From: Podarcis muralis
Taxonomy: Eukaryota
Direction of reading: 5' to 3'
DNA: 64,000 nucleotides
Assembly (NCBI RefSeq): GCF_964188315.1
Contig: NC_135657.1
Coordinates: 64,604,001-64,668,000, forward strand
The notes under the pieces are model-generated. The model was given only the letters and a program-made list of their open reading frames with translations, was not told the DNA's origin and searched no databases. Position 1 is the stretch's first letter. Each line of letters starts with the position of its first letter. A program made the translations under genes and the position numbers. This document shows, piece by piece, positions 1,671-59,715 of this stretch.

Positions 1671-2537
1671 TGTTGAAGCCACCTAAAATTACCTAGCCAC
1701 CATTTACTGTGGTAAAGCGTGTTCTCCATAACAGAGAGCACGTGCTGCGGTTGGGAAAAACAGGCCACCCTGCAGTGACTAGGCAAATTTGGTGAGGAAC
1801 CCAAGCCTTTAAGTGGTTAAATTGGGTTGCTGGGGAGTTTTGAATGTGGCCAATTTGGAGGAGGGGTCAGAGTCCTTAAATACAGGGGCCAGACGTTGGA
1901 CGTTCTCTTGGCCGTTTTGCATCGGATCACCCGCCCTCCCGCCCTTTTATAGGGTGGTTTTTTGTTTTGCTCGCTTGACCTTGCTATTGCCTGTCATGGG
2001 GTCGCCCGCCTTGGTGCGGGGGCCTAGTAGGAATTTTGCCATCTGGCTGATTGGCTGGTGCCATTTGGTTTTTGCCTACTACGTAGCAAATCGTCACAAC
2101 TTGTAAGGTTGGCGGTTAGGCATTGGTTAAATTGGTGCTTGGAGGGGTAAGTGCCTACCCCTCCAAATGATGCGGAAAGGGAATTCCGTTAAAGGAATCC
2201 AGGGGCTTGCCATACAATTTGTCATTGTCCCCGGAGTCAGACCTGCGGCCGTGCAAGCCCCACCGGAACATGAGGGTGAGAAGTGAGGGACTGTTGCCCA
2301 GTTTCAGATTTCTCACCCAATACTTGTTTCCCACGCTGGCTTCCGTTGGTGTCCGGAAGGGCCAGCTCTGTCCTTGAGGGCAAGGACAGATAGTCATAAC
2401 CAATGCCTAAGCAACCACTCACATTTTTTGTATTTAAATAAAGTTGTGGCCAAAATTATGCCAAAAACCTTAAACAAAAATCACGTGTGAAGTGTGATTT
2501 TTTTGGTGGGTGGCACTGTGGGACTCAACACGCAACA
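1671..2537. mobile_element. Unclassified LTR-like or DIRS-like insertion (boundaries approximate)
   Basis: CpG-richer block with TGTTG...CAACA candidate ends, AATAAA near 2437 and internal inverted repeats. No matching TSD found. Confidence 0.35.
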
Positions 2538-3057
2538 TCTGATGTTTGTTTCTTTGAATAGATATATTTGAAAGAATGACTCCATTTTAAAGGTGCTCTT
2601 TCTTCTACAAGATGCATGTGGAGCATCTGACATGAATTCCTAAACTGTAGTTTCCTATAAGAAACATTCAATAAGCTGTGTGTTTGAATACCATTATCCC
2701 TCCTGCTGCTTAAGACACTCTCTCAATTAGAAAACTCGAATTCTGTATCCATCCTGACAATCTGCTTTGTTTCTCATCATATTTATGTGCCAGCTGTTCA
2801 TGACTTTGACAAATGATGTCATTACCCAAGATGGTTGGTCCCCATTTATCTTTATTGCTGTTGTGCAAAGTGTCCAGAACAAGGAACTAGTAAGTGCTGA
2901 CTGGATCTTTAATCTGGAAGGCTATGGTTGGTTACCACCATATAGGGCCACATAGTATCTCTGAGTGACTTATTTAGCAGTCTTAGTTCTGCCTCACTGA
3001 GGAATACTACATTTGGGAAAGCTACTTAAAAGTTTGTAAAAGTCAAGTAAATATGTA

Positions 3058-5386
3058 CCGTATTTTTCGCACCATAGGACGCACTTTTTCCCTCCTAAAA
3101 AGCAAGGGAAAATGTGTGTGCGTCCTATGGAGCGAATGCAGGGGGGGAGGCAGGCGGGAAAAGCCCCCAAGAGCCGCACACAAGCTCCGTGCGCTCTTGC
3201 GGGCTTTTCCACAGGAGGGAGAAGGGACTGACTGGCCGCATCAGTCCCTTCTCCCACCTCCCAGGAAAGCCAGGAGAAGCCGTGCAGCCCTTTTAAAGTG
3301 CACGCGGCTTCTGCCGGTTTTGCGGGAGGTGGGGGAATTCCCCCACCTCCCAGAAAAGCCAGGAAAGCCCTGCGCAGCATCTCCCGGCAAGGAGAGGCTG
3401 CGCGGGGCTAAAGGGGAAGGCAAAACAGCGAGCGGGATCCATCCCGCTCGCTGCCTTGCCTTCTTCCATAGCCGCGCGCAACCCCTCCGCAAGGAGAGGC
3501 TGCGCGGGGCTAAAGGGGAAGGCAAAACAGCGAGCGGGATCCATCCCGCTCGCTGCCTTGCCTTCTTCCATAGCCGCGCGCAACCCCTCCGCAAGGAGAG
3601 GCTGCGCGGGGCTAAAGGGGAAGGCAAAACAGCGAGCGGGATCCATCCCGCTCGCTGCCTTGCCTTCTTCCATAGCCGCGCGCAACCCCTCCGCAAGGAG
3701 AGGCTGCGCGGGGCTAAAGGGGAAGGCAAAACAGCGAGCGGGATCCATCCCGCTCGCTGCCTTGCCTTCTTCCATAGCCGCGCGCAACCCCTCCGCAAGG
3801 AGAGGCTGCGCGGGGCTAAAGGGGAAGGCAAAACAGCGAGCGGGATCCATCCCGCTCGCTGCCTTGCCTTCTTCCATAGCCGCGCGCAACCCCTCCGCAA
3901 GGAGAGGCTGCGCGGGGCTTAAGGAGAAGGCAAAACAGCGAGCGGGATCCATCCCGCTCGCTGCCTTGCCTTCTTCCATAGCCGCGCGCAACCCCTCCGC
4001 AAGGAGAGGCTGCGCGGGGCTAAAGGGGAAGGCAAAACAGCGAGCGGGATCCATCCCGCTCGCTGCCTTGCCTTCTTCCATAGCCGCGCGCAACCCCTCC
4101 GCAAGGAGAGGCTGCGCGGGGCTAAAGGGGAAGGCAAAACAGCGAGCGGGATCCATCCCGCTCGCTGCCTTGCCTTCTTCCATAGCCGCGCGCAACCCCT
4201 CCGCAAGGAGAGGCTGCGCGGGGCTAAAGGGGAAGGCAAAACAGCGAGCGGGATCCATCCCGCTCGCTGCCTTGCCTTCTTCCATAGCCGCGCGCAACCC
4301 CTCCGCAAGGAGAGGCTGCGCGGGGCTAAAGGGGAAGGCAAAACAGCGAGCGGGATCCATCCCGCTCGCTGCCTTGCCTTCTTCCATAGCCGCGCGCAAC
4401 CCCTCCGCAAGGAGAGGCTGCGCGGGGCTTAAGGAGAAGGCAAAACAGCGAGCGGGATCCATCCCGCTCGCTGCCTTGCCTTCTTCCATAGCCGCGCGCA
4501 ACCCCTCCGCAAGGAGAGGCTGCGCGGGGCTAAAGGGGAAGGCAAAACAGCGAGCGGGATCCATCCCGCTCGCTGCCTTGCCTTCTTCCATAGCCGCGCG
4601 CAACCCCTCCGCAAGGAGAGGCTGCGCGGGGCTTAAGGGGAAGGCAAAACAGCGAGCGGGATCCATCCCGCTCGCTGCCTTGCCTTCTTCCATAGCCACG
4701 CGCAACCCCTCCGCAAGGAGAGGCTGCGCGGGGCTAAAGGGGAAGGCAAAACAGCGAGCGGGATCCATCCCGCTCGCTGCCTTGCCTTCTTCCATAGCCG
4801 CGCGCAACCCCTCCGCAAGGAGAGGCTGCGCGGGGCTAAAGGGGAAGGCAAAACAGCGAGCGGGATCCATCCCGCTCGCTGCCTTGCCTTCTTCCATAGC
4901 CGCGCGCAACCCCTCCGCAAGGAGAGGCTGCGCGGGGCTAAAGGGGAAGGCAAAACAGCGAGCGGGATCCATCCCGCTCGCTGCCTTGCCTTCTTCCATA
5001 GCCGCGCGCAACCCCTCCGCAAGGAGAGGCTGCGCGGGGCTAAAGGGGAAGGCAAAACAGTGAGCGGGATCCATCCCGCTCGCTGCCTTGCCTTCTTCCA
5101 TAGCCACGCGCAACCCCTCCGCAAGGAGAGGCTGCATGGGGCTATGGCTTCTTTAGCCCTGTGCAGCGTCTCCCGGCAAGGAGAGGCTGCATGGGGCTAA
5201 AGGGGAAGCCAAAACTTGGCTTGCTCCATAGCTGCTCGCAACCCCTCCAGCAGGGAGAGGTTGTGCGCACCCTGTACGCTGCTCTTTGGGTCTGGGGGGG
5301 GGGGAAAGATTTTTTTCTTGATTTTCCCCCCCTAAAAACTGGGTGCGCCCTATGGTCCGGTGCGCCCTATGGTGCGAAAAATACGG
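3058..5386. mobile_element. Non-autonomous Tc1/mariner (Tc2/Kanga-like) MITE swollen by an internal satellite
   Basis: 27-bp TIRs CCGTATTTTTCGCACCATAGG(A/G)CGCAC with 1 mismatch, flanked by TA at 3056-57 and 5387-88. CCGTA termini are typical of Tc2-group elements. Confidence 0.9.
3387..5144. repeat. 102-bp tandem repeat, 17 full units plus a partial unit; each unit is an imperfect palindrome
   Basis: Units start at 3387+102n (checked at 3489, 3591, 3897, 3999, 4509, 4611, 4713, 4917, 5019, 5121). About 66% GC, 10 CpG per unit. Confidence 0.98.
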
Positions 5387-6652
5387 TATATGATGATGCG
5401 ATTCAAATAGTACAATTAACAGATGGCAGGGACAATTGTGTATTTATATTTCTGGGCAACAACATTTGGCAGATATAATTATTTTACAGGTGTTAACTGC
5501 CCTTCTATTAAGAAATGGTACATCACAATAGATGCTTCATAAAGTCAACAATTTATCATCTCTTTTCATATCCCTTCCATGAAAACCTCCACAGCTAAAT
5601 TCAGCATATGCAAGTGTACTTTCAGGTTTGAAACAACAGAACTGAAGAATAGGTGTTGAATAATTTTCACACTGGTGACTGAGAAAAGCACCCATGTCTT
5701 TCTTTTTTTAAGAAGTTAACAAGTTACAAAGTACCCATAAGTACAAGCAGATAGATTTTGTGGGTCACCAACAGCTAGAGAGAACTAGTCTGGTTTTGAC
5801 ATAGAAGCTGAATTAATACTAATACCTTTACATTTGACGCCTTGGCATTCACCCTCTTCTCCCTGCATTGAAAAGCATATAGTAGAAGTTATAGAGATAT
5901 GGAGGTCAGCACCAATCCTTTGTTCAGAAAATCCTGCACTGCTTCATCATGTATCTGTCTTTGTGGGCATATTCTCCTTCATGCTTTACAGACCACTAGT
6001 CTTCGACAATTGACATTGGAAATCAGGTGACAAGTCTGCTGTCATGTACTGTACTAAGAAAATACCCTCTATAGTCAATGGGAAATGAAGGAAGATACCT
6101 TACTCAGCACATAGGTTATCCTGAATGATTACAGTACAACTAGAATCCTATGGTATGGCATATTTAGGCTAACCATTCACAGTCCACTTAGAGTAGTCTC
6201 ATTTAGTGTTGCCACAGCATATAAATGGATTTGTCCTTGGAAGATAGCATGAAATGCTTCTTATCATAATTGCCCATTTTTAGATATGAGTTGATAGTGC
6301 TTTTTTAATAGGGTTGTTAACCTATTAACTATTTTAGTTGATGAAGCAGTAAAAAGGCAGTTGATCAATCAGCTAAATTTAATATTACCAAAGCCCAATA
6401 TCAGTGCTTTTTAAAGATATTGAAGGAAATGTAGCATGACTTGAAAACAAGAGCTATCATCATAGTTAGAACAAAAGGCCATTTTAATCCCCCCCCCCAT
6501 ACTGTATTGCAATTAGGGATTAATGAATCAGTCTATTTTTCATCTCTCTTGCTTCTGCAGGTGCTCATCCTAAACCTGTTCAATCCCAATTCCACTAATA
6601 TGCAACTTAAAAAACTTATCATGAAATTTACATTTCACTATATATTTTTAAA

Positions 6653-6814
6653 GGGACGCGGGTGGTGCTGTGGGTTAAACCACAGAGTCTAGGACTTGCC
6701 GATCAGAAGGGTCGGCGGTTCAGATCCCTGCAATGGGGTGAGCTCCTGTTGCTCGGTCCCAGCCAACCTAGCAGTTCGAAAGCACGTCAAAGTGCAAGTA
6801 GATAAATAGGTACC
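6653..6814 (+). mobile_element. Sauria SINE (Squam1-type), 3'-truncated
   Basis: GGGACGCGGGTGGTGCTGTGGGTTAAACCACAGAG...GCAGTTCGAAAGCACGTCAAAGTGCAAGTAGATAAATAGGTACC matches the recalled lacertid Sauria SINE 5' part. Confidence 0.85.
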
Positions 6815-15354: not shown

Positions 15355-15599
15355 CAGTGGTGGAGAAACCCTCTCCGGTACCCGGGGCGGGGCAGCCCAT
15401 ACAGAGTGCTCATGTATGGCATCCCGTACGGATTGCGCATGTGTGGCATCCTGTACGGAGTACGCACATGCGGCAGCCCGTATGGACGCCCTCGGCCGCT
15501 CTACAGCTGGAGGGAGGCAGGGGCCATCTTGTCTTCCCCCCCCCCGAGTGGCACCTGGGGCAGCCTGTCCCCTCCACACTCCCCCTTCCTACACCCCTG
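15355..15599. mobile_element. hAT-type MITE with an internal 27-bp tandem repeat (about 3.5 units from 15392)
   Basis: Perfect 8-bp TSD ACTGGAAG (15347-54 and 15600-07). Imperfect TIRs CAGTGGTGGAG / CTACACCCCTG. Confidence 0.8.
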
Positions 15600-17357: not shown

Positions 17358-19806
17358 ATGTAAACCATAAACAGTTGACATTGGAGAACTTGCCCATCTC
17401 CGTCTCAGAAGAAGCCTAGATATTGAAGTTGCTTGGAACTTTGTCAAAGTTCCAAAAGTGTTTTAAAAATTCAAAAATAAAAAGGAGAGATTCCTGTGTG
17501 CAAACACCACATCTCAGATAGCCTTTTTTTTTACAGTCGTTATGGCAATGTCTGGTTACAACACTAAATCAAGAGACTAGGCCTAGCCTCCTTTCCCTCC
17601 CTCTCCCCTTCCAGTATGAATTCCCCTTCCCTTTTAGATTCACAACTGTTTATTGTGTCATTCAAACCTTAAACTGTGGTTAGTGAAAGCAAGCCGACTT
17701 CATAAGGCATGGCTTGAAGTTGGTTTGCTTCCACTAACCTTAGTTAAGAGGGTTGTGGGGTTTTTATAAAAAAAAACTCGTTAATTCGTTTTTTCTGTTT
17801 TCAATACAAACAGACATGCATTGAGATCACTGGGGTGGGAGGAGATTCATAAATAAGTGTGGAAATGAATTGGATGGGAGAAGGGGAAAAGAAAATGGAA
17901 AATGGAAGTGAAGGTTTCTGAACTTCTTCTGGCTGTACTAGAGGAGACAGGGAACAAGCAAGCCTGGGTGGAGACTGTTTTTCCCCCTTGCAGTGCTAAC
18001 CTATGGTTTAATATTATGTCCAAACTAGCTCAGGGTGAGTTTGCCTTGAGCTTAGTGGATGATGACCAAGCCAAAAGGCACAGGTCATTGGAAAGCTACC
18101 CAGGTGCTAGGAGAAGGCTCCAAGAAGATTCCTGTGTGCATCCACGGTGCATCCACATACATATATTTTCCGCTTGTTCATGAGGGGGTTGCTGATTCTC
18201 CAACTTTTCACACAACATGAAATACTTCTCCATAGGCTTCCTCTCCTTTAGGCTTCACTTTTAGGGAGCTACGTTAGGAAGGAGGAGGGGTGAAAAGCTT
18301 ATTCAAGTGCATGGCCCTTTGAAATCCAGGCCTGGACCACTGGATCTTGTCCATGCTGCTACACACTGAAGGCAGCATTTTGCAGAGGTCCTTGCATTCA
18401 TGAAAACAAGCTGATTATCGCTCAGGTGGTTGAATATATATTTTCAACATTGGTCTCCTTCGTCCTACTTCCGAAACTCAAACTATCTACCTCTTTAATG
18501 AATAAATTAATAGCTAATACAGAAGAGAAAACATCTAAGTGGAAAGCTAGTCACTGTGAGGAGTAAATCCATTAATCTGTATGTAGCACACTAATTCAGA
18601 AAAGCCCATGTATCTGACAATAATATTGCAAGGATGGGGGGGTGGGGACGGTTAAATGGTTGCATTGTCTTGTAAGCTGTATGCTTGAGTACATTTATTG
18701 GAGCCCCTGTTTGGCTGTGCCATCTGTGCCTTGTGCTGTTTGCTTAGTTAAGATTTTTCGTTTGATAAATGAGCGTTCTTAAAAGACAGTGAAGGCTTAT
18801 GAATGGATAGAAGAACGCTTGGCTCATTTGGCTTCACCCTTAATCTGGCAGAATACTGAGATACACAAACTATAACTTCCTGCTGTAAATAAATATACCA
18901 GGAATGTAGAATGTAGGAATGCAGTGTGTGTTGAGTGAATTTTTAGTATATGTGGTCATGGTCATGACTTTCATTGTGTAATCACTTTAATTAAGTCAGG
19001 CTATAAAGTTAGTCTTGCATGAGGAATGAATACACTAGGGAGATGGTGATGGATTGATGGCTGTTGAGGGAGTCAGACAAGTGTTGCTGGTGTTTTCCAG
19101 TTGAGTGGAGAGCTGTGCACATGTTAATGGTTGAGCTTGGGTGATAGTGCAGACCTTTACCATCTATGGTGTTTATGGGGGGGGGGCGGTCAAGGAAAGA
19201 AGAGCATGACATTTTGTAGTGGTGTCGTATTTTTGTTTTGGCTTTTTTTGTCGATGAATAATGGCATTACCCAAGTAATAAATTTTAATTAATATCTGTA
19301 TCATTTTGGTTACTGCTAGTTTAGTAGAGCAATTAGTGTAATTAGTAAACAGCATTGCTTGGTGGCATGATAAATCACAGTGCAGAGCACACTGACTCTT
19401 CACCAGGATGATATATTATCCAATTTACTCAAATTTAATGCATGCCGAAAGAAACCCCAAAGCACACAGAAGCATAGCAACAGCTGTGGTGGTCTTTGGT
19501 TGCTCTTGGTGGGTTTGCTGTCAGAGACTTTGAATTGGTCCAACAATGTCAGCTAATTAAACATTTTAGTGTGGATTTTTTTTTTACAGTTGTCGTTCCT
19601 TTTTTTAAAATGTAGATTTACAAATGTTTGTAAATGCTGGCAGATGTGACAGCAGAACGGGATGGAATTCTTAGGTCAAGTCAAAGCAGATATGCAGTGG
19701 GCATTGTGCAGACTTAATCCACTAATGAGGGTTCTGTATTTCTTGTGTCACTTCTATGCTCGAACACTCCTGAAAGTATCTCATGTTCTCTCTGTGTGTG
19801 TTTTAG

Positions 19807-20109
19807 AGCCTATGAGAACACCGAAAACATTGAAGATCGCTGAGATCCAGGCCCGACGCATTGCTGTGGATTGGGAATCTCTAGGTTACAACATTACTCG
19901 CTGCCACACTTTCAACGTCACGATCTGCTACCATTACTTCCGTGGCCATAATGAAAGCAAGGCGGACTGCTTGGATATGGACCCCAAAGCACCTCAACAT
20001 GTTGTGAACCACCTGCCTCCTTACACTAATGTCAGCCTCAAAATGATCCTGACTAATCCTGAGGGGAGAAAGGAAAGTGAAGAGACAATAATCCAAACAG
20101 ATGAAGATG
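19807..20109 (+). CDS. PTPRK: PTPRK exon 8 equivalent (303 bp), FN3 repeat 2
   Basis: ttttag|AGCCTATG...GATGAAGATG|gtaggt. Translates (E)PMRTPKTLKIAEIQARRIAVDWESLGYNITRCHTFNVTICYHYFRGHNESKADCLDMDPKAPQHVVNHLPPYTNVSLKMILTNPEGRKESEETIIQTDED. Phase 1 to phase 1. Confidence 0.98.
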
Positions 20110-26446: not shown

Positions 26447-27139
26447 AATATAGGACACAATATACGTCTAAATTTTGACACTTGCCAAGCTGCAGTCAGC
26501 ATGATTGGTCCAACGTTGTATATAGTAGGTCCAAGGGACGGTTTTCTGCTGAAGGGCCATGTCCCCTGGTGATGAACCTTTGGGGGCCTACATGTCTGAT
26601 GTTCCAGAGGCAAAAGTGGTTGAGGAAATGGATGCAACTCTTCCTGTGTATAGTGGACTATATTCCAGCCATGCATGTTTCTATTCACGTGCGCGCGCAC
26701 GCGCGCACACACACACACACACACCATCCAGGCAAGTAAGAGGCATGTTTACAGTTAAAGGACAATTTCCTATCAGGCAAAAGTACTTGAGGATGATGCA
26801 GAGCAGGGTTGCTGAGGGAACATGGTCTGGGGCCTGTAGGGTCTGGGGTTCCCTATTGTAAAGCCTTAAATTAGTGAAATGTAGAACCATTTTGTTCATC
26901 TCATAAAAATTATACAAGCCAAAACATTTTTTATGATGTTATAGATTGATTTACCGAGCTTACAGAGAGCCAAGGTGGAGAGATTGTCGTGTGTCCATTG
27001 CCACTATATGCTAAGTTTGGATTTGAAAGCAAGGTTCTTTCGCTGAAATCCAGAAGCTTAATCTAAACGTTTCACTGATTCTCAGAAATTCCTTAATCCT
27101 GCCAGGGATCCTGCTAAGACTCTGAAATTGTTTCCACAG

Positions 27140-27341
27140 GTCAGTTACAGCAGCATAAGATCATTTGATCCCGCAGTTCCAGTGGCTGGGCCAGCTCAAA
27201 CTGTGTCAAAGCTATGGAACAGTACACATCATGTCTTTTCCCATCTACATCCCGGGACTACCTACCAGTTTTATATAAGGGCCAGCACGGTGAAAGGATT
27301 TGGGCCAGCTGCGGCAATCAATGTAACCACCAATATTTCAG
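27140..27341 (+). CDS. PTPRK: PTPRK exon 10 equivalent (202 bp), second half of FN3 repeat 3
   Basis: ttccacag|GTCAGTTAC...ATTTCAG|gtaatg. Translates [67 protein letters not shown]. Confidence 0.98.
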
Positions 27342-28216
27342 GTAATGGCAAGCACACACACACACAAAAATATTTTTCATATTCTTACATATTTGTTTTT
27401 ACATAAATTGTTACCCCTTCCCTTCAGGGAATTCTAACAAAACATGCTGGCTGCAGTCAAGAGAAGATCATTGGGTTTAATTAAACATGCAAGAAGGGGA
27501 TATTGTGAATGAGAGTGCAAGCTGCATCCCATTCCCCTTGCTCTGTGCATGTTCAAGGCTGATTATCTGCTGTGGGGAAGCCTCCTTTGTTCATGGAGGT
27601 AACTGCATGTTTGCAACCCTGATACTCCAGGCATGGGAGCCTCCACGACTACTGGGGGCTTGCTTGCTGAAGACAATTGTCCCTGAACATGTGGACTATG
27701 ATTGAGATGGAGGGCAGTGTAGAGAGAGAGAGACCTACTGCACTCATGCAGTCTCCCCTCCTTGTGTGTTAATTTAGTCTCCATAATATGGGGGTCGCTA
27801 ACACAGTGCCTGCAGTGCCTGTGAAGGCTGCCTTTGGTGCCCCGGGATAAACCAGAATCCTCAAATTCAAAGCTTTCATTTTTTAACAAATAAAATTTCT
27901 ACCGTTTTTAGAACTTGAGGTATGATGCAAAAATTACTTGTCTCTCCCATGCTCCCTCCTCACCCCTCTCTTTCGGTCCACCCTTTCAGCATTTACTTTG
28001 CACTCACCTGAAAAATTCTAGCAGAGGTGGGAGAGAGGGAAAGGTGAAGCATGCATGTATAAGACAAACACAGAAAGATGTCTATGTGTCTGTGTTCCAT
28101 ATGCATGTCTGCGCTCTTTAAGAGTGAACGTGGTATGGCCACCTGATACATCTTTTGCCTGGTGCTGAGACAAATTATCCCTGTTGCTTTTAGACAGCAA
28201 CAGCATCTGAGTGTAC

Positions 28217-35857: not shown

Positions 35858-36892
35858 TGAAAATGCCGTGGTTCTTTTTGAAACAGGAGCTCAATTCAAC
35901 TTTGTCCTTTATGGCACTTTCTAACAGAACATCCAAGTGCTGATTATCAATTAGTCTAATGTTTCAGTTGTTTGCCTCTTTCCTCTATAGGGAAAAGAAG
36001 AGCTATAATTACATTCTCTGGTAAAATGAGATTTTTATGAGGAATGACCAAGAGCTGTCATTGCGAGGAAGGTATTGGCAAGTTTAGGCTGAAGTTTGTT
36101 TTGGGGGTTAGCTTTTTTTCCCCGTCCTTTTTTTTTTTAATAGGCTAGATGCCATCTGCTCTAGCAATTTGTAACGTTTTTGTCAGTGGCAACTGTAGGG
36201 AAAGGAGTCAGACTATTTGGAGGGAGTGGACAGATTTCCGTCCATCTGTGCTTGTATTACAGGATGTCGCTTATACTTTAGATCTGCATAGCTGTGAGCC
36301 AAGTTAGATGCCACAGCAAGGTCAAAAGGTGGAGATGCCTGTCGACGCGCTTCTGTCTCTAGTAATATGACAACAGCAAATTGGTGCTTCAGGCATTGCT
36401 TGGAGGCTGCCACGACGGGCCTTGAAGCCGAGCTTCCTATAATATCCTTTCAAAGGCAAATGCTGACTTCAAATGCTGCAAATTATCAAGCAGAAGGATT
36501 AATCTATTAAAAATGTCTGTGCTTAATGTAAGATCCAGTCGTGGTCTGCTTAATAGTTCAAAGTCTACATCAGTGATGAGAAAGACTTTCCTGTTCCATT
36601 AGATCTTTTGGGGAAGGGAGGCTGAGAGCGACGTTGCTGTGGAAATAAAGGAGGGAACTGAAATTAAAATTAGGAGAAATAAAATGACCACCTTCCACTC
36701 GGGGCCTATTGCTGAATATGATTTGGTTATGAGACGCATAAGCTGCCATTTTTAAACCTGCTTCTCTGCTTGACTTGCGCTTCTGAGCTGAGTGTGGTAC
36801 TATTTGGCGCAACATAGTTACATGATATAGTGTTGTGTGGTGTCGGTCTGGCATCCTCTTATAAGTCATGTTTTTCTCTTGGCTTTTAACAG

Positions 36893-37166
36893 CGCCTATC
36901 AGATTGTTGTTGAAGAGCTGCATCCTCATCGGACAAAACGAGAAACAGGTGCAATGGACTGCTACCAGATTCCTGTCACATTTCAAAATGCTCTGAGCAG
37001 TGGCTCGCCATATTATTTTGCTGCAGAATTGCCACCTGGTAACCTTCCTGAACCAGCTCCTTTCACGGTTGGTGATAACAGAACTTACCAAGGCTTCTGG
37101 AACCCACCATTGGCTCCCCGTAAAGGATATAATATCTACTTCCAAGCTATGAGCAGTGTCGAGAAG
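36893..37166 (+). CDS. PTPRK: PTPRK exon 12 equivalent (274 bp), FN3 repeat 4 with furin site
   Basis: ttttaacag|CGCCTATCAG...GAGAAG|gtaggc. Translates AYQIVVEELHPHRTKRETGAMDCYQIPVTFQNALSSGSPYYFAAELPPGNLPEPAPFTVGDNRTYQGFWNPPLAPRKGYNIYFQAMSSVEK. Confidence 0.98.
36930..36941 (+). other. PTPRK: Codons for the furin/proprotein convertase S1 cleavage site RTKR
   Basis: CGG ACA AAA CGA gives R-X-K-R. R2B RPTPs are known to be cleaved here into E and P subunits. Confidence 0.9.
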
Positions 37167-37517
37167 GTAGGCACCTCCCTGAATTTTCTTCTGGGGAAAA
37201 AAATTAGATCTGTTGCTAGAGGTTGTTTGGACTATCAGGCCAAAGTCCAGAAAGATCTTCATGGCACAGACAACTAGCTTGCACATGAGCAGCACTGAGC
37301 TTTTGACTTGTTCCTTTCATACAGCAATCCCTCCAGCCAGGTATGCACAGTAAACAACTTTTGATTTCCCTAGCCTATCTCAAAAGAGGCTTGTTGAGCA
37401 GCATGCAGACTTGTCGGAGGGGTGGTGGAGAGGAGTCAAAAGTCACATTTGCTTTTATTTCTTGAAAACATTTTGATCCTCTCTTTCCAAACCAAGGAAG
37501 CAAACTGCAGTAAAATA

Positions 37518-48790: not shown

Positions 48791-49293
48791 TGCTAATAGG
48801 TCCAGCATTGTCAGTGGAGGCATTTGGAGATCTTCATATGCAAATGTACAGTCAATTCACAACTTGTACGCATTTCACTTGTGCGCTCACAGCTTTACAC
48901 ACTTGGCAGCCAGCCAGCCGTGATGGCACAAATTAAACACACACAAGGCAGAGAGCTTAAAAGCTCTTCCTGTGCTGGGTTTTCCTGCTGTGGAGGGAGT
49001 TTTTAAGATCTATGCCTTGCTTACCAGGCTCTGGGAAGCTCCCATGGGACATGTCCCAGAGCTGGTAAGCAAGGCAGAAAACTTAAAAGCTCTCCACCTT
49101 GCATGTGGGGTGAGACCCACTTGATAAACTGGCTCCAGAAAGGTAGGGGTGGTTATGCGGGGACATTTCCGGGGTTGATTTGGCTGCACACAATTTCACC
49201 TACATGTGCAATCCCCACAACCTAACTGCTGCACAAATTGTGAGTCATCTGTATTGCAACACTGATTTTGGCCCAGAAATTTTCCCCCCTATA

Positions 49294-50144
49294 CAGTGGT
49301 GCCTAGCAAGACAAAATTAATTCGTTCCGCAAGTCTCTTCGTCTTGCGAGTTTTTCGTCTTGCGATGCACGGTTTCCCATAGGAATGCATTGAAAATCAA
49401 TTAATGTGTTCCTATGGAAACCGCCTTCAGACCAGGTCCGGGGACAGTCTGTCCCCCGACCTCTTCTGAAGGCTAGGGGGGGGAACAAGGGCTTTTCTTC
49501 CCACCCCCAGCATTTTAAAAAACCCTGGGACAGCGGAGGACTTCTCCGCTGTCCGGGGCGATCTTAAAATGCTGGCGGGCGGCATTTTAAAATCGCCCCG
49601 GGACAGCGGAGGTCCAGGACCTCTTCTGAAGGCGGGCGGGGGGCGAAAGTCTTTGCTCCCCCCCCCCCCCGCCTGCCTTCAAAAGCCGTCCGGGACAGCG
49701 CGTTTCTCCGCTCTCCCGGGAAGGCAGGCAGGGGGGAACAAAGACTTTTGCCCCCCGCCGGCCTTCAGAAGGTGTTCCCGCCCCGCCGCCCGGCTTCGGA
49801 GCATCGTTCTGAAGCCGGGCGGCGGGGGGAGGTGTTCCGTCCCCGCCGCCTGGCTTCGGAGGGAGGTGTTCCCGCCCCACCGCCCGGCTTCGGAGCATCG
49901 TTCCAAAGCCAGGCGGCGGGGGGAGGAGGTTTCCCGCCCCGCCGCCAGGCTTCGAAGGAGGTCCGAGGACAGTGGGGAAGACGCGCTGCGCTTCCCCGCT
50001 GTCCCGGAGATTTCCCTATGGGCTGTCGTCTTGCGAAGCAAGCCCATAGGCAAATTCGTTTTGCGAAGCGCCTCCAAAACGGAAAACCCTTTCGTCTAGC
50101 GGCTTTTCCGTCTTGCGAGGCGTTCGTCTTGCGGGGCACCACTG
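49294..50144. mobile_element. Tigger-like MITE (851 bp) with a GC-rich hairpin-repeat interior
   Basis: TA|CAGTGGTGCCTAGCAAGAC ... GTCTTGCGGGGCACCACTG|TA. Confidence 0.9.
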
Positions 50145-52281
50145 TATTGTGATCCGACAGCCATTCAGGCTGGATGACTCCTTAGGCCAAAATGATAGTT
50201 TTTCTGTGCGCTATTTCTTTGTTCCATTTTGGTATGGTAAACTCACCATGATGTGACTATTCAAAATCAATGTCAAGGCTTATTCCATGATAAATTTCCG
50301 TTTCTCCGATAATCACCAGTTCTTGACGAACTACTGGAAGCTAAAATTTTAAAGTGTATATGACATCTATGGGTCTCCAAAAAATTGGGAAGGCAAAACT
50401 TGTGGCTTTACCATGTGAGAACTGAGCTATACTTCCAAAGTAGGACCACATTATTCTCCGTTTACAGTGACTCTAGGATACAAGAAACTAACCATGAGGA
50501 GCCACAGCCATGCCTATACTGGGCAAATTTTTAGAATCTATTTGTCATGTCCATCCATCCATTGCATGTTTAGATCCACACCCAAAAAGGGTGAATGCAT
50601 AAAGAAGCAAGTCTCTATCCCATCCTTGAAAACAGCCATTTTAAGTAGGGAACTGCAATGAAGCCTGTACTTCGAACACAGGTTGTATGACTTATTATCT
50701 ATAAGAAATACCTCAAAGTCATAATCAAACTCTGTTAATACATATTTTATTACTGCCCATCTCAGGCATCCACCTTGTTTTGAAAACTTCTGAGTAAGAA
50801 TTATTCATCTTGATTATTTGAAATAATGATATGTAGGATTTGGTACTACGAAGAAAACATTTTGCTTTTTTGTTTTTGTTTACTTCAGCATTCTCTGAGG
50901 AAAACTTCCTGCAGTTATTTATACAGTAGATGTTGGATGTGCAGTAACTAAATTTCCATTATGGAAGTTTTTTGCAGTGCCTGAAGTAATAGTTCCATTT
51001 GTTTTCTTCGTGTTATCCCATTTTCCTATTTTTCCTCTTAATTTAATCTTTCATCTTCACATAATTCATCACACTTCATTAGTTCCCTCAGAGAACAAGC
51101 TATTTTCCCCTTGCACTAGCTCTAGTAAATAGGATGAAAATTAGATTTTTCGTACCTATCACATCCAAGCTTTTCCACTGTCCTGTGGAACTGACTGCAT
51201 CCCCTCTGCAACGAATCAATCTTCTGTGGCGAAGTTAATGGATGACTTCCCAATTGCTTTATGTTAGTCTAATCAGATTTGCTATCTCTATCCATCAAGC
51301 TGCCTTTTTCGCTTCTTTCAAAGCTCTCCTAAATATGCCCTCCTCCTGTGAAGCAGTTCTTGGACCATCAATAGCTGCACTATATATATATATTATAATA
51401 CACTCTGTTATCATTCACGCTACCATAATTTGAACTTTTTAATGCTTACTGCCCTGGAATCCATCTTTGAATTGAAGAAAGAGGAAAAAACCGCCGCATA
51501 AATAAATACTATGCAAATCCCCACTGTTTAGTACACACTGCCACATTTTTAATAGCTCTCCTGCTTACATAGTTGGCAGACCATTTGTTTAGACAGGGCG
51601 CGTGCAACTTTAGCATTTGGAAGATGGTTTTGCTTGATTCACAGTACATTGCCTTCTCCATTGTTGGCCTGGCAGTTATCCTAACTTCATAGTTTTCAAG
51701 TGTTCATCCAAGTAGTCTGCTTTTGCAAGCTCTTCAACCTATCTCTCCCACCACCACGCACACCTTTCTCTGTGCCACCTTGAACTCTTTGACTCACCCC
51801 TAGAATCCTAAGCCCCGCTTGATTACTGTGCCTTACAGCTGCTAATATGACCCCTGCCCTTTGATTGATTTAGAGCTTGTAGTTTATACTTCAGCTCTCC
51901 AGGTGTAAAATTCAGTGCTTCTCCTTGCCTTGCCCTTTTCTTCACCCTGTTCTCCAATTATTGGAGCAGTTGTTCAGCAGCTACCTACCTGTGACCTAGT
52001 TGTGACCTACCGTCCAGACCACCCACCAGGAACTTGTGCTTGGGGAGGAACTAGAAGAAAAATGTGAGAACCGCCATCCTCAGTGTTAATTAAGACTGAA
52101 TGGAAATGTTGGCTTGTTTTTATTGTTTCTAGGAGCTATACAACATTTTTGAAAAGACAAAACAAAAATGCAATTGCTGCCTACAAAATTACAATCCAAT
52201 AGGCATGGTAGAAAAGGAAGAAAGGGCTGCAAGAGAATGAACAAAAAATAAAATACAGGGTTGTATTCGACATAGCACTAA

Positions 52282-58115: not shown

Positions 58116-59715
58116 CAGTGGGGTATTTGATCCCCTGCTATATTTGCCCGTTTGCCCTCTGATGAAGAAATGACCAGTCCATAATTTTAATGGTAGGTTT
58201 ATTGTAGCTGAGAGACAGAACAACAACAGGAAAACCCCCAGAAACCCAGAAGACAAAAGTCAGAAATTGATGTGCAGTATAATGAGTGAAATAAGTATTT
58301 GATCTGCTATCAGCCAGCCAGATGTCAGGCTACCTGGTATCTTCACTGTATGTAACAAGCTGAGATTAGAGGCACCTTACCTGTAATCCCAGCTCATTAC
58401 AGTACCTGTACAAAAGACACCTGTCGACAGAAGCAATCAATCCAGCAGATTCCAAAGTAGCCACCATGACCAAGACCAAAGAGCTGTCCAAGGATGCCAC
58501 GGACAAGATTGTAGACCTGCACAAGGCTGGATTGGGCTACAAGACTATTGCCAAGCAGCTTGGTGAGAAGGTGACAACAGTTGGTGCAATAATTCGCAAA
58601 TGGAAGAAACACAAAATAACTGTCAACCTCCCTCGGTCTGGGGCTCCATGCAAGATCTCATCTCGTGGAGTTGCAATGATCAGGAGAACGGTGATGAAGC
58701 AGCCCAGAACTACATGGGGAGAACTTGTCAATGATCTCAGGGCAGCTGGGACCATAGTCACCATGAAATAGTCATACCACCAGTTGGTAACACACTACGC
58801 CGTGAAGGACAGAGATCTTGCAGGGCCTGCAAGGTCCCTTTGCTCAAGACAGCACATGTATAGGCCCGTCTCCAGTTTGCCAATGCACATCTGAATGACT
58901 CAGAGGAGAACCGGGTGAAGGTGTTGTAGTCAGATGAGACCAAAATCGAGCTCTTTGGCATCAGCTCAGCTCACCGTGTTTGGATGAGGAGGAATGCTGC
59001 CTACAACCCCAAGAACACCATCCCCACCGTCAAACATGGAGGGGGACATATTATGCTTTGGGGGTGTTTTTCTGCTAAGGGGACAGGACACCTTCACTGC
59101 ATCAAAGGGATGATGGACAGGATCATGTATCATCAAATATTGGGTGAGCACTTCCTTCCCTCAGCCAGGGCATTGAAAATGGGTCAAGGATGGGTATTCC
59201 AGCATGACAATGACCCAAAACACATGGCTAAGGCAACAAAGGAGTGGCTCAAGAAGAAGCACATTAAGGTCCTGGAGTGGCCTAGCCAGTCTCCAGACCT
59301 CAATCCCATTGAAAATCTGTGGAGGGAGCTGAAGGTTCGAGTAGCTACACATCAGCCTCAAAATCTTACTGACTTGGAGAGGATCTGCAAAGAGGAGTGG
59401 GATAAAATACCTCCTGAGATGTGTGCAAACCTGGTGGCCACCTACAAGAAACGTCTGACCTCTGTAATTGCCAACAAGGGTTTTGCCACCAACTACTAAG
59501 TCATCTTTTGCAAAGGGATCAAATACTTATTTCCCTCATTATAATGCACATCAATCTCTGACTTTTGTCTTCTGGGTTTCTGGGGTTTTTCCTGTTGTTG
59601 TTCTGTCTCTCACAGCTACAAGAAACCTACCATTAAAATTATGGACTGGTCATTTCTTCGTCAGAGGGCAAATGGGCAAATTTAGCAGGGGATCAAATAC
59701 TCCCCCCCCTCACTG
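58116..59715 (+). mobile_element. Full-length Tc1 DNA transposon (1600 bp), IR/DR type
   Basis: TA TSD (58114-15 and 59716-17). TIRs of about 200 bp (58116-58305 and 59517-59715), each with an inner copy of the terminal AGTATTTGATC motif. Confidence 0.97.
58466..59499 (+). pseudogene. Tc1 DD34E transposase pseudogene (reconstructs to 340 aa)
   Basis: N-terminal paired-like HTH region and LPRSGAP linker. Catalytic residues (W)[13 protein letters not shown] and PIENLW with 34 residues between D2 and E. Lesions: net 11-nt insertion at 58769-82 and TAG stops at 58861 and 58927. Confidence 0.95.

What the first reader, a model, noticed from the sequence alone, without database searches (positions are those of the whole stretch)
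3387..5144. Satellite built entirely of fold-back units: 17 x (48-bp arm + CC + 48-bp inverted arm + GCAA)
Each 102-bp unit is a near-complete palindrome. The arms match at 39/48 positions, with a perfect 13-bp central stem CAGCGAGCGGGAT-CC-ATCCCGCTCGCTG. The 1.75 kb array is thus an alternating chain of inverted half-units that could extrude many cruciforms, and it would form a long multi-hairpin, dsRNA-like region in the PTPRK pre-mRNA on either strand. Such a region could be a substrate for ADAR editing or small-RNA processing, or a fragile site. The structure is seen directly; the consequences are inference.
Basis: partly seen in the sequence, partly recalled or inferred. Interest (0 to 1): 0.75.

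Follow-up and report, generated by a model that had tools for sequence, protein, structure and literature searches.

The report
Hairpin-repeat array inside a lizard transposon
The 1.76-kb block of 17 near-identical 102-base hairpin-forming repeats is real, but it is the swollen middle of a common cut-and-paste transposon sitting in an intron of a receptor tyrosine phosphatase gene, so it is an ordinary, young piece of selfish DNA with no sign of a function of its own.

Summary
Positions 3387-5144 hold 17.2 head-to-tail copies of a 102-bp unit, 99.6% alike. Each unit is a 48 + CC + 48 + GCAA near-palindrome: 39/48 arm matches, a perfect 13-bp central stem and one BamHI site per unit.

The array is the interior of a 2,329-bp non-autonomous DNA transposon (3058-5386). 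It has 27-bp terminal inverted repeats (26/27), TA on both sides and no coding capacity. Its arms are themselves chains of shorter hairpin modules, two of which are shorter relatives of the amplified unit.

Contig depths in two DNA runs put the transposon ends at roughly 10^4 and the unit at roughly 10^3-10^4 times single-copy depth, as a rough guide only. The scan had already found sister copies of this family on other DNA of this genome, including a 14 x 102-bp one.

The host gene is an R2B receptor tyrosine phosphatase on the + strand. PTPRK is plausible but not proven.

Two RNA runs gave no reads on the unique flank, almost none on the array and no RNA-only A>G changes. The dsRNA/ADAR, small-RNA and fragile-site ideas therefore remain untested inference. 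This is a new member of a known kind: a MITE-borne tandem repeat.

The parts
3056..3057 (.). TA next to the left end (putative target-site duplication)
   Evidence: Read directly from the sequence. RNA reads from many other loci stop matching at 3055/3056, and their loose ends agree poorly (0.45-0.57). An X1 contig covering 2509-3057 ends here.
3058..3084 (+). Left terminal inverted repeat, 27 nt
   Evidence: The 21-nt core matches exactly at 3058-3078 (+) and 5366-5386 (-), with 0 expected by chance. The local alignment gives 26/27.
3058..3141 (+). Terminal hairpin module: the repeat plus an inward inverted copy of the 13-nt motif GTGCGYCCTATGG. This is the highest-copy part of the family.
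   Evidence: Inverted repeat 3066-3084 / 3118-3136, 95%. RNA fold -39.8 kcal/mol, z -7.5. Motif copies at 3072-3084 (-) and 3118-3130 (+). Summed contig depth reaches 1.44 million against 139.9 for the unique flank in X1.
3157..3259 (+). Two further hairpin modules of the left arm (3157-3210 and 3213-3259)
   Evidence: Inverted repeats I4 (94%) and I3 (95%). The fold of 3050-3400 gives -112.2 kcal/mol, z -13.3.
3299..3386 (+). Palindromic module centred on GAATTC. Its 3' part (3366-3386) is a paralogue of the 3' arm of module S1 and pairs with the first array unit.
   Evidence: I1 has 43-nt arms at 74%. 3366-3386 matches 5155-5175 directly at 19/21. See also alignment A2.
3387..5144 (.). Tandem array, 17.2 x 102 bp. 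Each unit is GCAA + 48-nt arm + CC + 48-nt inverted arm. GC 65.4%, CpG observed/expected 0.89.
5121..5175 (+). Module S1, a 55-nt short hairpin. Its first 24 nt are also the partial last array unit.
   Evidence: 5121-5144 is identical to 5176-5199. RNA fold -36.4 kcal/mol, z -7.2. See also alignment A2.
5176..5248 (+). Module S2, a 73-nt hairpin. It equals the 102-bp unit without its central 29-nt palindrome. It differs mostly at CpG sites and carries one G-C to C-G paired swap.
   Evidence: Alignment A2. RNA fold -34.5 kcal/mol, z -3.9. It matches the unit's 5' 28-mer with 2 mismatches.
5293..5334 (+). G-run / C-run hairpin of the right arm
   Evidence: Folds.
5342..5386 (-). Right end: two direct copies of the 17-nt subterminal motif (5342-5358 and 5359-5375). 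The second lies inside the 27-nt right terminal inverted repeat (5360-5386).
   Evidence: Direct-repeat family D3. Motif hits at 5343-5355 and 5360-5372. Repeat match.
5387..5388 (.). TA next to the right end (putative target-site duplication)
   Evidence: Read directly from the sequence.

Best explanation
The array is the internally expanded core of a non-autonomous, TA-targeting cut-and-paste DNA transposon. The element is MITE-like and most likely belongs to the Tc1/mariner superfamily. It spans 3058-5386 and lies in the sense orientation in an intron of an R2B receptor tyrosine phosphatase gene of a lizard.

The interior of the element is a chain of imperfect hairpin modules. One 102-bp module already existed as an imperfect palindrome, with arms only 81% alike. 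That module was then amplified as a direct tandem repeat to about 17 copies. The likely mechanisms are replication slippage and unequal sister-chromatid exchange, which hairpin formation on single-stranded DNA would favour (inferred).

Shared variants show that at least one exchange moved a 5-unit block. Near-identity of the units and an undepleted CpG content show that the expansion is recent.

The family spreads by transposition and so seeds such arrays across the genome. At this locus the array is most likely neutral passenger DNA. Its cruciform and dsRNA potential is a by-product of its build, not a device.
For: Shown:
- Terminal inverted repeats match at 26/27, with TA on both sides.
- There is no real protein domain in the element. 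The long open frames exist only because 102 = 3 x 34; Pfam gives only summed repeat noise with 0 passing stretches.
- The arms are significant hairpin chains, z -13.3 and -6.8.
- S2 is the unit minus its central 29-nt palindrome, and S1 is shorter still.
- Arm-to-arm identity is 81% while unit-to-unit identity is 99.6%. Seven of the 9 arm mismatches never vary among the 17 units; the other two (arm positions 15 and 25) are each touched in two units, by G88A and G29A. The palindrome therefore predates the tandem amplification.
- Units 6 and 11 share A24T + G29A, five units apart. Unit 13 combines A24T with the G88A also seen in unit 17.
- CpG observed/expected is 0.89 in the array, 0.50-0.62 in the arms and 0.25-0.30 in the flanks.
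- Family abundance: in X1 the unique flank has depth 139.9. The terminal module sums to 0.6-1.44 million and unit bins to 0.2-0.35 million. X3 shows the same pattern.
- RNA reads on the terminal module have loose ends of low agreement, and 94% of laid reads run on into unlike sequence, so they come from many loci.
- Joints in DNA contigs show family members with other module contents (tables 5 and 5c).

Context:
- Tc1/mariner MITEs with an internal satellite of variable copy number are a described phenomenon, e.g. Xenopus miDNA4 and Xstir, bivalve MITEs and Tetris (review PMC12628747).
- Earlier scan notes report sister copies in this genome. I did not check them.
Against: No other full copy of the family could be fetched, so the TA duplication, the ancestral single-unit state and copy-number variation between loci rest on one locus plus indirect read evidence.

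Summed contig depth is only a rough proxy for copy number, as the tool itself warns.

No autonomous partner or transposase was identified. The only transposase remnant in the window (58370-59496) has no matching terminal repeat.

The superfamily and 'Tc2' assignment could not be tested against a transposon library.

Whether the array expanded at this site or arrived already expanded is unknown.
Confidence: 0.85

Rival explanations
1. The array is transcribed within the phosphatase pre-mRNA and folds into long dsRNA. It then acts as an ADAR-editing or small-RNA-producing locus, or as a cruciform-prone fragile site that affects the host gene.
For: The fold potential is very strong on both strands. 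The array lies in sense orientation in an intron of a + strand gene. A 13-bp perfect stem is within the range that extrudes cruciforms in supercoiled plasmids, as in the classical ColE1 case (my own knowledge).
Against: In two RNA runs, each read to about 12%, depth is 0 on the unique flank 2576-3023 and 2 or less on the array. No RNA-only A>G change was seen, and all listed differences also occur in DNA contigs. Rfam hits are all far below gathering scores. The same unit occurs thousands of times elsewhere, so nothing is specific to this gene. Arm identity of 77-81% is low for palindrome-driven fragility (established knowledge from yeast inverted-repeat studies, not tested here).
Confidence: 0.06
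2. Assembly artefact. The unit and the transposon are real, but the figure of 17 copies, or the contiguity of the array, was produced by the assembler.
For: The copy number could not be verified. Only short-read contigs were available, and they break at the repeat boundary (the contig covering 2509-3057 ends at 3057). Read laying cannot lay the full array.
Against: The array carries four distinct variant units at defined positions (6, 11, 13, 17), which a collapsed or padded array would not show. Both junctions to the arms are clean. An array of 1.76 kb is far shorter than current long reads (inference). Earlier scan notes describe sister copies with similar arrays (unchecked).
Confidence: 0.05
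3. A host-side regulatory element. The array acts as an intronic CpG island, working as an alternative promoter, an enhancer or an insulator.
For: It meets the formal CpG-island criteria: 1,758 bp, GC 65.4%, CpG observed/expected 0.89, in a genome at 0.30.
Against: No reads start at or flank the array in the two RNA runs. The high CpG content is explained more simply by youth, given 99.6% unit identity. Two of the four distinct unit variants are already CpG transitions. The older arms of the same element are CpG-depleted at 0.50-0.62.
Confidence: 0.03

Closest known systems
Xenopus miDNA4 (Tc1/mariner MITE carrying an internal satellite; Scalvenzi and Pollet, as summarised in review PMC12628747)
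   Same: It is a TA-type MITE whose interior holds a tandem repeat, present as one monomer or as arrays of variable copy number. The transposon acts as carrier and seed of a dispersed satellite.
   Different: Here each unit is itself a near-complete palindrome and belongs to a series of nested hairpin modules (55, 73 and 102 nt). The units are GC- and CpG-rich rather than flanked by AT-rich microhomologies. The host is a lizard. No sequence comparison was possible.
Xenopus Xstir, and bivalve tandem-repeat-containing MITEs (e.g. the Donax trunculus element cited in PMC12628747)
   Same: The tandem repeats derive from the internal sequence of a MITE, and composite MITE + array forms exist. Stem-loop formation is invoked in their origin.
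   Different: In Xstir the proposed mechanism joins two neighbouring elements. Here the array grew inside one intact element, between two unique arms.
Foldback transposons (Drosophila FB, Tetris)
   Same: These are elements dominated by self-complementary repeats that can give rise to satellite DNA. The whole array here is a 77% palindrome.
   Different: Foldback elements have long terminal inverted repeats that are themselves built of tandem subrepeats. Here the terminal repeats are only 27 nt, the two arms are otherwise unrelated to each other, and the array is a single central block.
Anolis carolinensis non-autonomous Tc1/mariner families (Novick et al. 2010, PMC3014272)
   Same: The anole has many non-autonomous TA-type families without a known autonomous partner, one of them with Tc2-like ends.
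   Different: That paper does not describe internal hairpin arrays. The words hairpin, palindrome and minisatellite are absent from it. The terminal-repeat string of this element was found in no paper of the library.

Membership tests
Tc1/mariner-type non-autonomous DNA transposon (MITE-like) | Terminal inverted repeats | tested here: met
   27 nt, 26/27 complementary, at 3058-3084 and 5360-5386.
Tc1/mariner-type non-autonomous DNA transposon (MITE-like) | TA target-site duplication | tested here: met
   TA at 3056-3057 and at 5387-5388. Reads from other loci keep matching up to 3055/3056, which includes the TA. Only one full locus was seen, and a 4-nt TATG reading with element ends TACCG...CGGTA is not strictly excluded.
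Tc1/mariner-type non-autonomous DNA transposon (MITE-like) | No transposase gene; high copy number | tested here: met
   Pfam finds no real domain in the element's open frames. Summed contig depth is 10^3-10^4 times the single-copy flank in two DNA runs from different studies (rough measure).
Tc1/mariner-type non-autonomous DNA transposon (MITE-like) | Small size (usually under about 800 bp) | tested here: not met
   The element is 2,329 bp with the array. With a single unit it would be about 670 bp. It is therefore an array-expanded derivative and not a miniature element as it stands.
   No transposon library was on hand. The window's only transposase remnant (58370-59496; HTH_SB, DDE_3) shares no terminal repeat with the element.
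Classical satellite DNA | Head-to-tail tandem monomers | tested here: met
   17.2 copies of 102 bp at 99%.
Classical satellite DNA | Long arrays free of transposon ends (tens of kb or more, typically heterochromatic) | tested here: not met
   The array is 1.76 kb, enclosed by intact transposon arms, and sits in a gene intron. It is better called a transposon-borne minisatellite.
Foldback (FB-type) transposon | Long terminal inverted repeats built of tandem subrepeats | tested here: not met
   Left arm against reverse-complemented right arm aligns only over the 27-nt ends.
Known structured RNA or miRNA family (Rfam 15) | A hit at or above the family's gathering score | tested here: not met
   The best hit is 33.6 bits against a gathering score of 98. 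All hits are generic hairpin matches.
CpG island | Length over 500 bp, GC over 55%, CpG observed/expected over 0.65 | tested here: met
   1,758 bp, 65.4%, 0.89. The unmethylated state, which is the biological criterion, cannot be tested here.
ADAR / endo-siRNA dsRNA substrate | Transcription of the region, plus RNA-only A>G changes or small RNAs | tested here: inconclusive
   Depth is 0 on the unique flank and 2 or less on the array in two RNA runs read to about 12%. No RNA-only differences were seen. No small-RNA library was available.

The most novel reading that the evidence does not exclude
The TA-flanked transposons of this lizard may share a so far undescribed growth mode. Their interiors would be built by repeated local fold-back duplication: hairpins that lengthen at the tip (55 to 73 to 102 nt) and keep pairing through arm-to-arm correction. 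Single modules would then be blown up into CpG-island-like palindromic arrays. On this reading the family is a genome-wide generator of dsRNA-forming, CpG-rich islands that could feed small-RNA silencing or perturb methylation and replication in hundreds of genes.

Hints: a second element with unrelated terminal repeats in the same window has the same hairpin-chain build. There is one G-C to C-G paired swap between S2 and the unit. The - strand RNA hairpin is the better one.
Probability: 0.08. Interest if true: 0.55.

Novelty: new member of a known kind. Interest (0 to 1): 0.25.

Why it matters
The finding matters mainly for annotation and for studies of repeat evolution.

- It is a clean, young example of a satellite-like array caught while still inside an intact transposon. 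The shorter ancestral-looking modules sit next to it.
- The family is common enough to scatter CpG-island-like, hairpin-forming arrays through genes.
- Such arrays yield false CpG islands and false long ORFs: 588 and 619 codons are open here.
- They are also likely sites of assembly error and copy-number polymorphism.
- Nothing indicates a role in the phosphatase gene.

Tried and rejected
1. A metagenome scan for the 21-nt terminal repeat gave one hit, L001. It is a bacterial coding contig with no second repeat and no array, so the match is chance.
2. A viral-contig scan for the 28-nt unit core gave nothing.
3. An Rfam scan at permissive E-values gave only sub-threshold generic hairpin hits (mir-605, mir-2545 and others).
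4. The coding-repeat idea is rejected. Both strands are open across the array only because the period is a multiple of 3. Pfam 'hits' (TetR_C_11, TraI_2) have 0 passing stretches and are summed repeat noise.
5. The idea that the array was built by alternating inversion-duplication (rolling-hairpin-like) is rejected. The arms are 81% alike but the units 99.6%, and the arm mismatches are essentially the same in all units.
As the tool suggested, I laid 2000-3900 instead.
7. A literature search for the terminal-repeat string gave 0 papers. The anole transposon paper has no held supplements.
8. A regex for PTP catalytic motifs in six frames found none. The window covers only the fibronectin-domain exons.
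9. I ran no further search on resolving the phosphatase paralogue or on fishing for junk ORFs of sister arrays. The expected yield was low and the operators had flagged the cost.

Full report
**Observation**

Tandem Repeats Finder reports one array at 3387-5144: period 102, 17.2 copies, 99% matches, no indels. Cutting it into 17 units gives a consensus from which only 7 of 1,734 cells differ.
- Units 6 and 11 carry A24T + G29A.
- Unit 13 carries A24T + G88A.
- Unit 17 carries C43T + G88A.
- A 24-nt partial unit closes the array.

The unit is GCAA + 48-nt arm + CC + 48-nt arm. Arm against reverse-complemented arm matches at 39/48, and the innermost 13 pairs are perfect. The 28-nt centre occurs 17 times, against 0 expected by chance. 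GGATCC occurs once per unit.

Because of this build the array is a palindrome at every scale. The largest pair of arms is 3391-4254 / 4257-5120: 864 nt, 77% complementary, 2 nt apart.

Predicted folding is far beyond shuffled controls.
- One unit as RNA: -75 kcal/mol on the + strand (z -10.1) and -83 kcal/mol on the - strand (z -11.3).
- The hairpin centred on GCAA is equally good, at -78.4 kcal/mol.
- Two units as DNA: -89.9 kcal/mol, z -12.6.

**What surrounds it**

The array is not free-standing. A 21-nt string at 3058-3078 recurs inverted at 5366-5386 and nowhere else in the window. The alignment extends this to 27 nt at 26/27. TA lies directly outside both ends.

Between the ends and the array lie a 329-nt left arm and a 242-nt right arm. 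Beyond the terminal repeats they are not inverted copies of each other. Each arm is a chain of hairpins.
- Left arm: 3066-3084/3118-3136, 3157-3174/3193-3210, 3213-3231/3241-3259, and a palindrome centred on GAATTC at 3299-3376. Fold z is -13.3.
- Right arm: S1 (5121-5175), S2 (5176-5248) and a G-run/C-run hairpin. Fold z is -6.8.

A 13-nt motif, GTGCGYCCTATGG, occurs twice at each end and nowhere else in the window.

Alignment A2 shows that S2 is the 102-bp unit without its central 29-nt palindrome. S1 is a still shorter hairpin on the same base. The 21 nt before the array (3366-3386) are a paralogue of the 3' arm of S1.

S2 differs from the unit mostly at CpG sites (CGCG against CATG; CCGCGC against CTGCTC). 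It also carries one paired G-C to C-G swap (GGCAA/TTGCC against GCCAA/TTGGC).

Pfam finds no real domain in the open frames of the element.

**Family abundance**

In DNA run X1 the unique flank 2576-3023 sits on one contig of depth 139.9, which ends exactly at 3057. Summed contig depth then jumps to 0.6-1.44 million over the terminal module (3024-3151) and to 0.2-0.35 million over unit sequence. X3, from another study, shows the same profile.

The tool warns that summed depth is not a copy number. I take it only as an order of magnitude: thousands of ends and thousands of units per genome.

Joints and inserted letters in contigs (tables 5 and 5c) show relatives with other module contents.

The scan's own earlier notes list many sister copies in this genome. 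They include a 2.2-kb copy with 14 x 102 bp, and arrays of 60- and 119-bp hairpin units. I did not see their sequences, so I use them only as leads. In this sense the scan has found this thing before, on other DNA of the same genome.

**How the array arose**

The two arms of a unit are 81% alike, while units are 99.6% alike. Seven of the nine arm mismatches never vary among the 17 units. The imperfect palindrome is therefore old, and the amplification was a recent direct tandem duplication of a ready-made 102-bp module. It was not a chain built by alternating inversions.

The shared double variant in units 6 and 11 points to an exchange that moved a 5-unit block. Unit 13 looks recombinant.

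CpG observed/expected is 0.89 in the array, 0.50-0.62 in the arms and 0.25-0.30 around the element. Two of the four distinct unit variants are CpG transitions. The array is young, or less likely protected from methylation.

Slippage and unequal exchange, helped by hairpin formation, are the inferred mechanism. This was not tested. Whether the expansion happened at this site or in a master copy is open.

**Host gene**

A Pfam scan of the 150 longest stop-free stretches outside the element found Fn3_PTPRU (1.8e-35) and fn3. They map to 36831-37274 (+) and 27062-27403 (+) respectively.

PDB searches align 19803-20108 (+) to human PTPRM residues 357-460 (6.7e-32) and 36891-37157 (+) to residues 599-687. 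I judged identity at about 60-65% by eye on the printed alignments.

The gene is therefore an R2B receptor tyrosine phosphatase on the + strand, and probably not the PTPRM orthologue. The array lies about 14.7 kb upstream of the second-fibronectin-domain exon. That places it in an intron, in sense orientation (inference from exon order).

PTPRK is plausible but was not separated from PTPRT or PTPRU.

**Test of the functional ideas**

Two bulk RNA runs, each read to about 12%, give zero depth on the unique flank, depth of 2 or less on the array and 17-45 on the terminal module. There the two mate orientations are about equal. In all, 94% of laid reads run on into unlike sequence, and loose ends agree poorly, so the reads come from many other loci.

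The one difference listed inside the array (3473 C>T) also occurs in DNA contigs, as do the A>G differences on the element's left arm except the one at 3076. They are most simply read as family variants, not editing.

Rfam gives nothing near a gathering score.

The ADAR, small-RNA and fragile-site readings are neither supported nor excluded. They would apply equally to thousands of sister arrays.

**Comparison with known things**

Tandem repeats that expand inside MITEs and turn into dispersed satellites are well described. Examples are Xenopus miDNA4 (a Tc1/mariner MITE with one to many monomers), Xstir, bivalve MITEs and the foldback element Tetris (review PMC12628747).

The anole genome has many orphan non-autonomous Tc1/mariner families, one with Tc2-like ends (PMC3014272).

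This element matches that kind. What sets it apart is that every module, the amplified one included, is a hairpin, and that modules of nested length sit side by side.

It fails the foldback-transposon definition, because it has no long repeat-built terminal repeats. It also fails the classical-satellite definition, because the array is short and enclosed.

**Verdict**

This is a new member of a known kind, of low to moderate interest.

No sequence was taken for human.

Noticed in passing
window 49293-50145: A second TA-flanked MITE-like element with different ends (CAGTGGTGCC...; 25 nt, 88%). Its interior is again a chain of GC-rich hairpins with short tandem arrays (94 bp x 2.3 and 34 bp x 2.1). 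The hairpin-chain build is therefore not peculiar to one family.
   Followed up: partly
window 19803-20108, about 27200-27310, 36891-37157 (+): Exons for fibronectin-III domains of an R2B receptor tyrosine phosphatase (Fn3_PTPRU 1.8e-35; about 60-65% identity to human PTPRM). No catalytic-domain motifs occur in the window.
   Followed up: partly
window 58370-59496 (+): Remnant of a Tc1/Sleeping-Beauty-like transposase (HTH_SB 1e-23, DDE_3 1.2e-11). It shares no terminal repeat with the array-bearing element.
   Followed up: partly
window 2000-2511: Another very high-copy interspersed repeat just upstream. Summed contig depth reaches up to 1.1 million against 139.9 for the unique flank, with a 14-nt perfect inverted pair at 2116-2129 / 2397-2410.
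   Followed up: no
window 3391-3488 (every unit): Seven of the 9 arm mismatches are transitions. Five become G-U pairs in - strand RNA and two in + strand RNA, so the antisense hairpin is the more stable one (-83 against -75 kcal/mol). The numbers are too small to be significant.
   Followed up: partly
window 3296-5152 (-) and 3297-5060 (+): The array is open for 619 and 588 codons on opposite strands because the period is 34 codons. Gene callers could report these as spurious repeat proteins. Pfam gives only summed noise.
   Followed up: yes
window 15391-15486: A 27-bp tandem repeat, 2.6-2.8 copies at 78-81%, in a GC-rich patch. Its nature is unknown.
   Followed up: no
window 6650-6700: A tRNA-like SINE head (GGGACGCGGGTGG...GGTTAAACC...) that resembles squamate Sauria-type SINEs from memory. 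This fits a lizard source.
   Followed up: no
L001 3511-3531: An exact 21-nt match to the terminal repeat lies inside a bacterial coding region of a metagenome contig. It is a chance match.
   Followed up: yes
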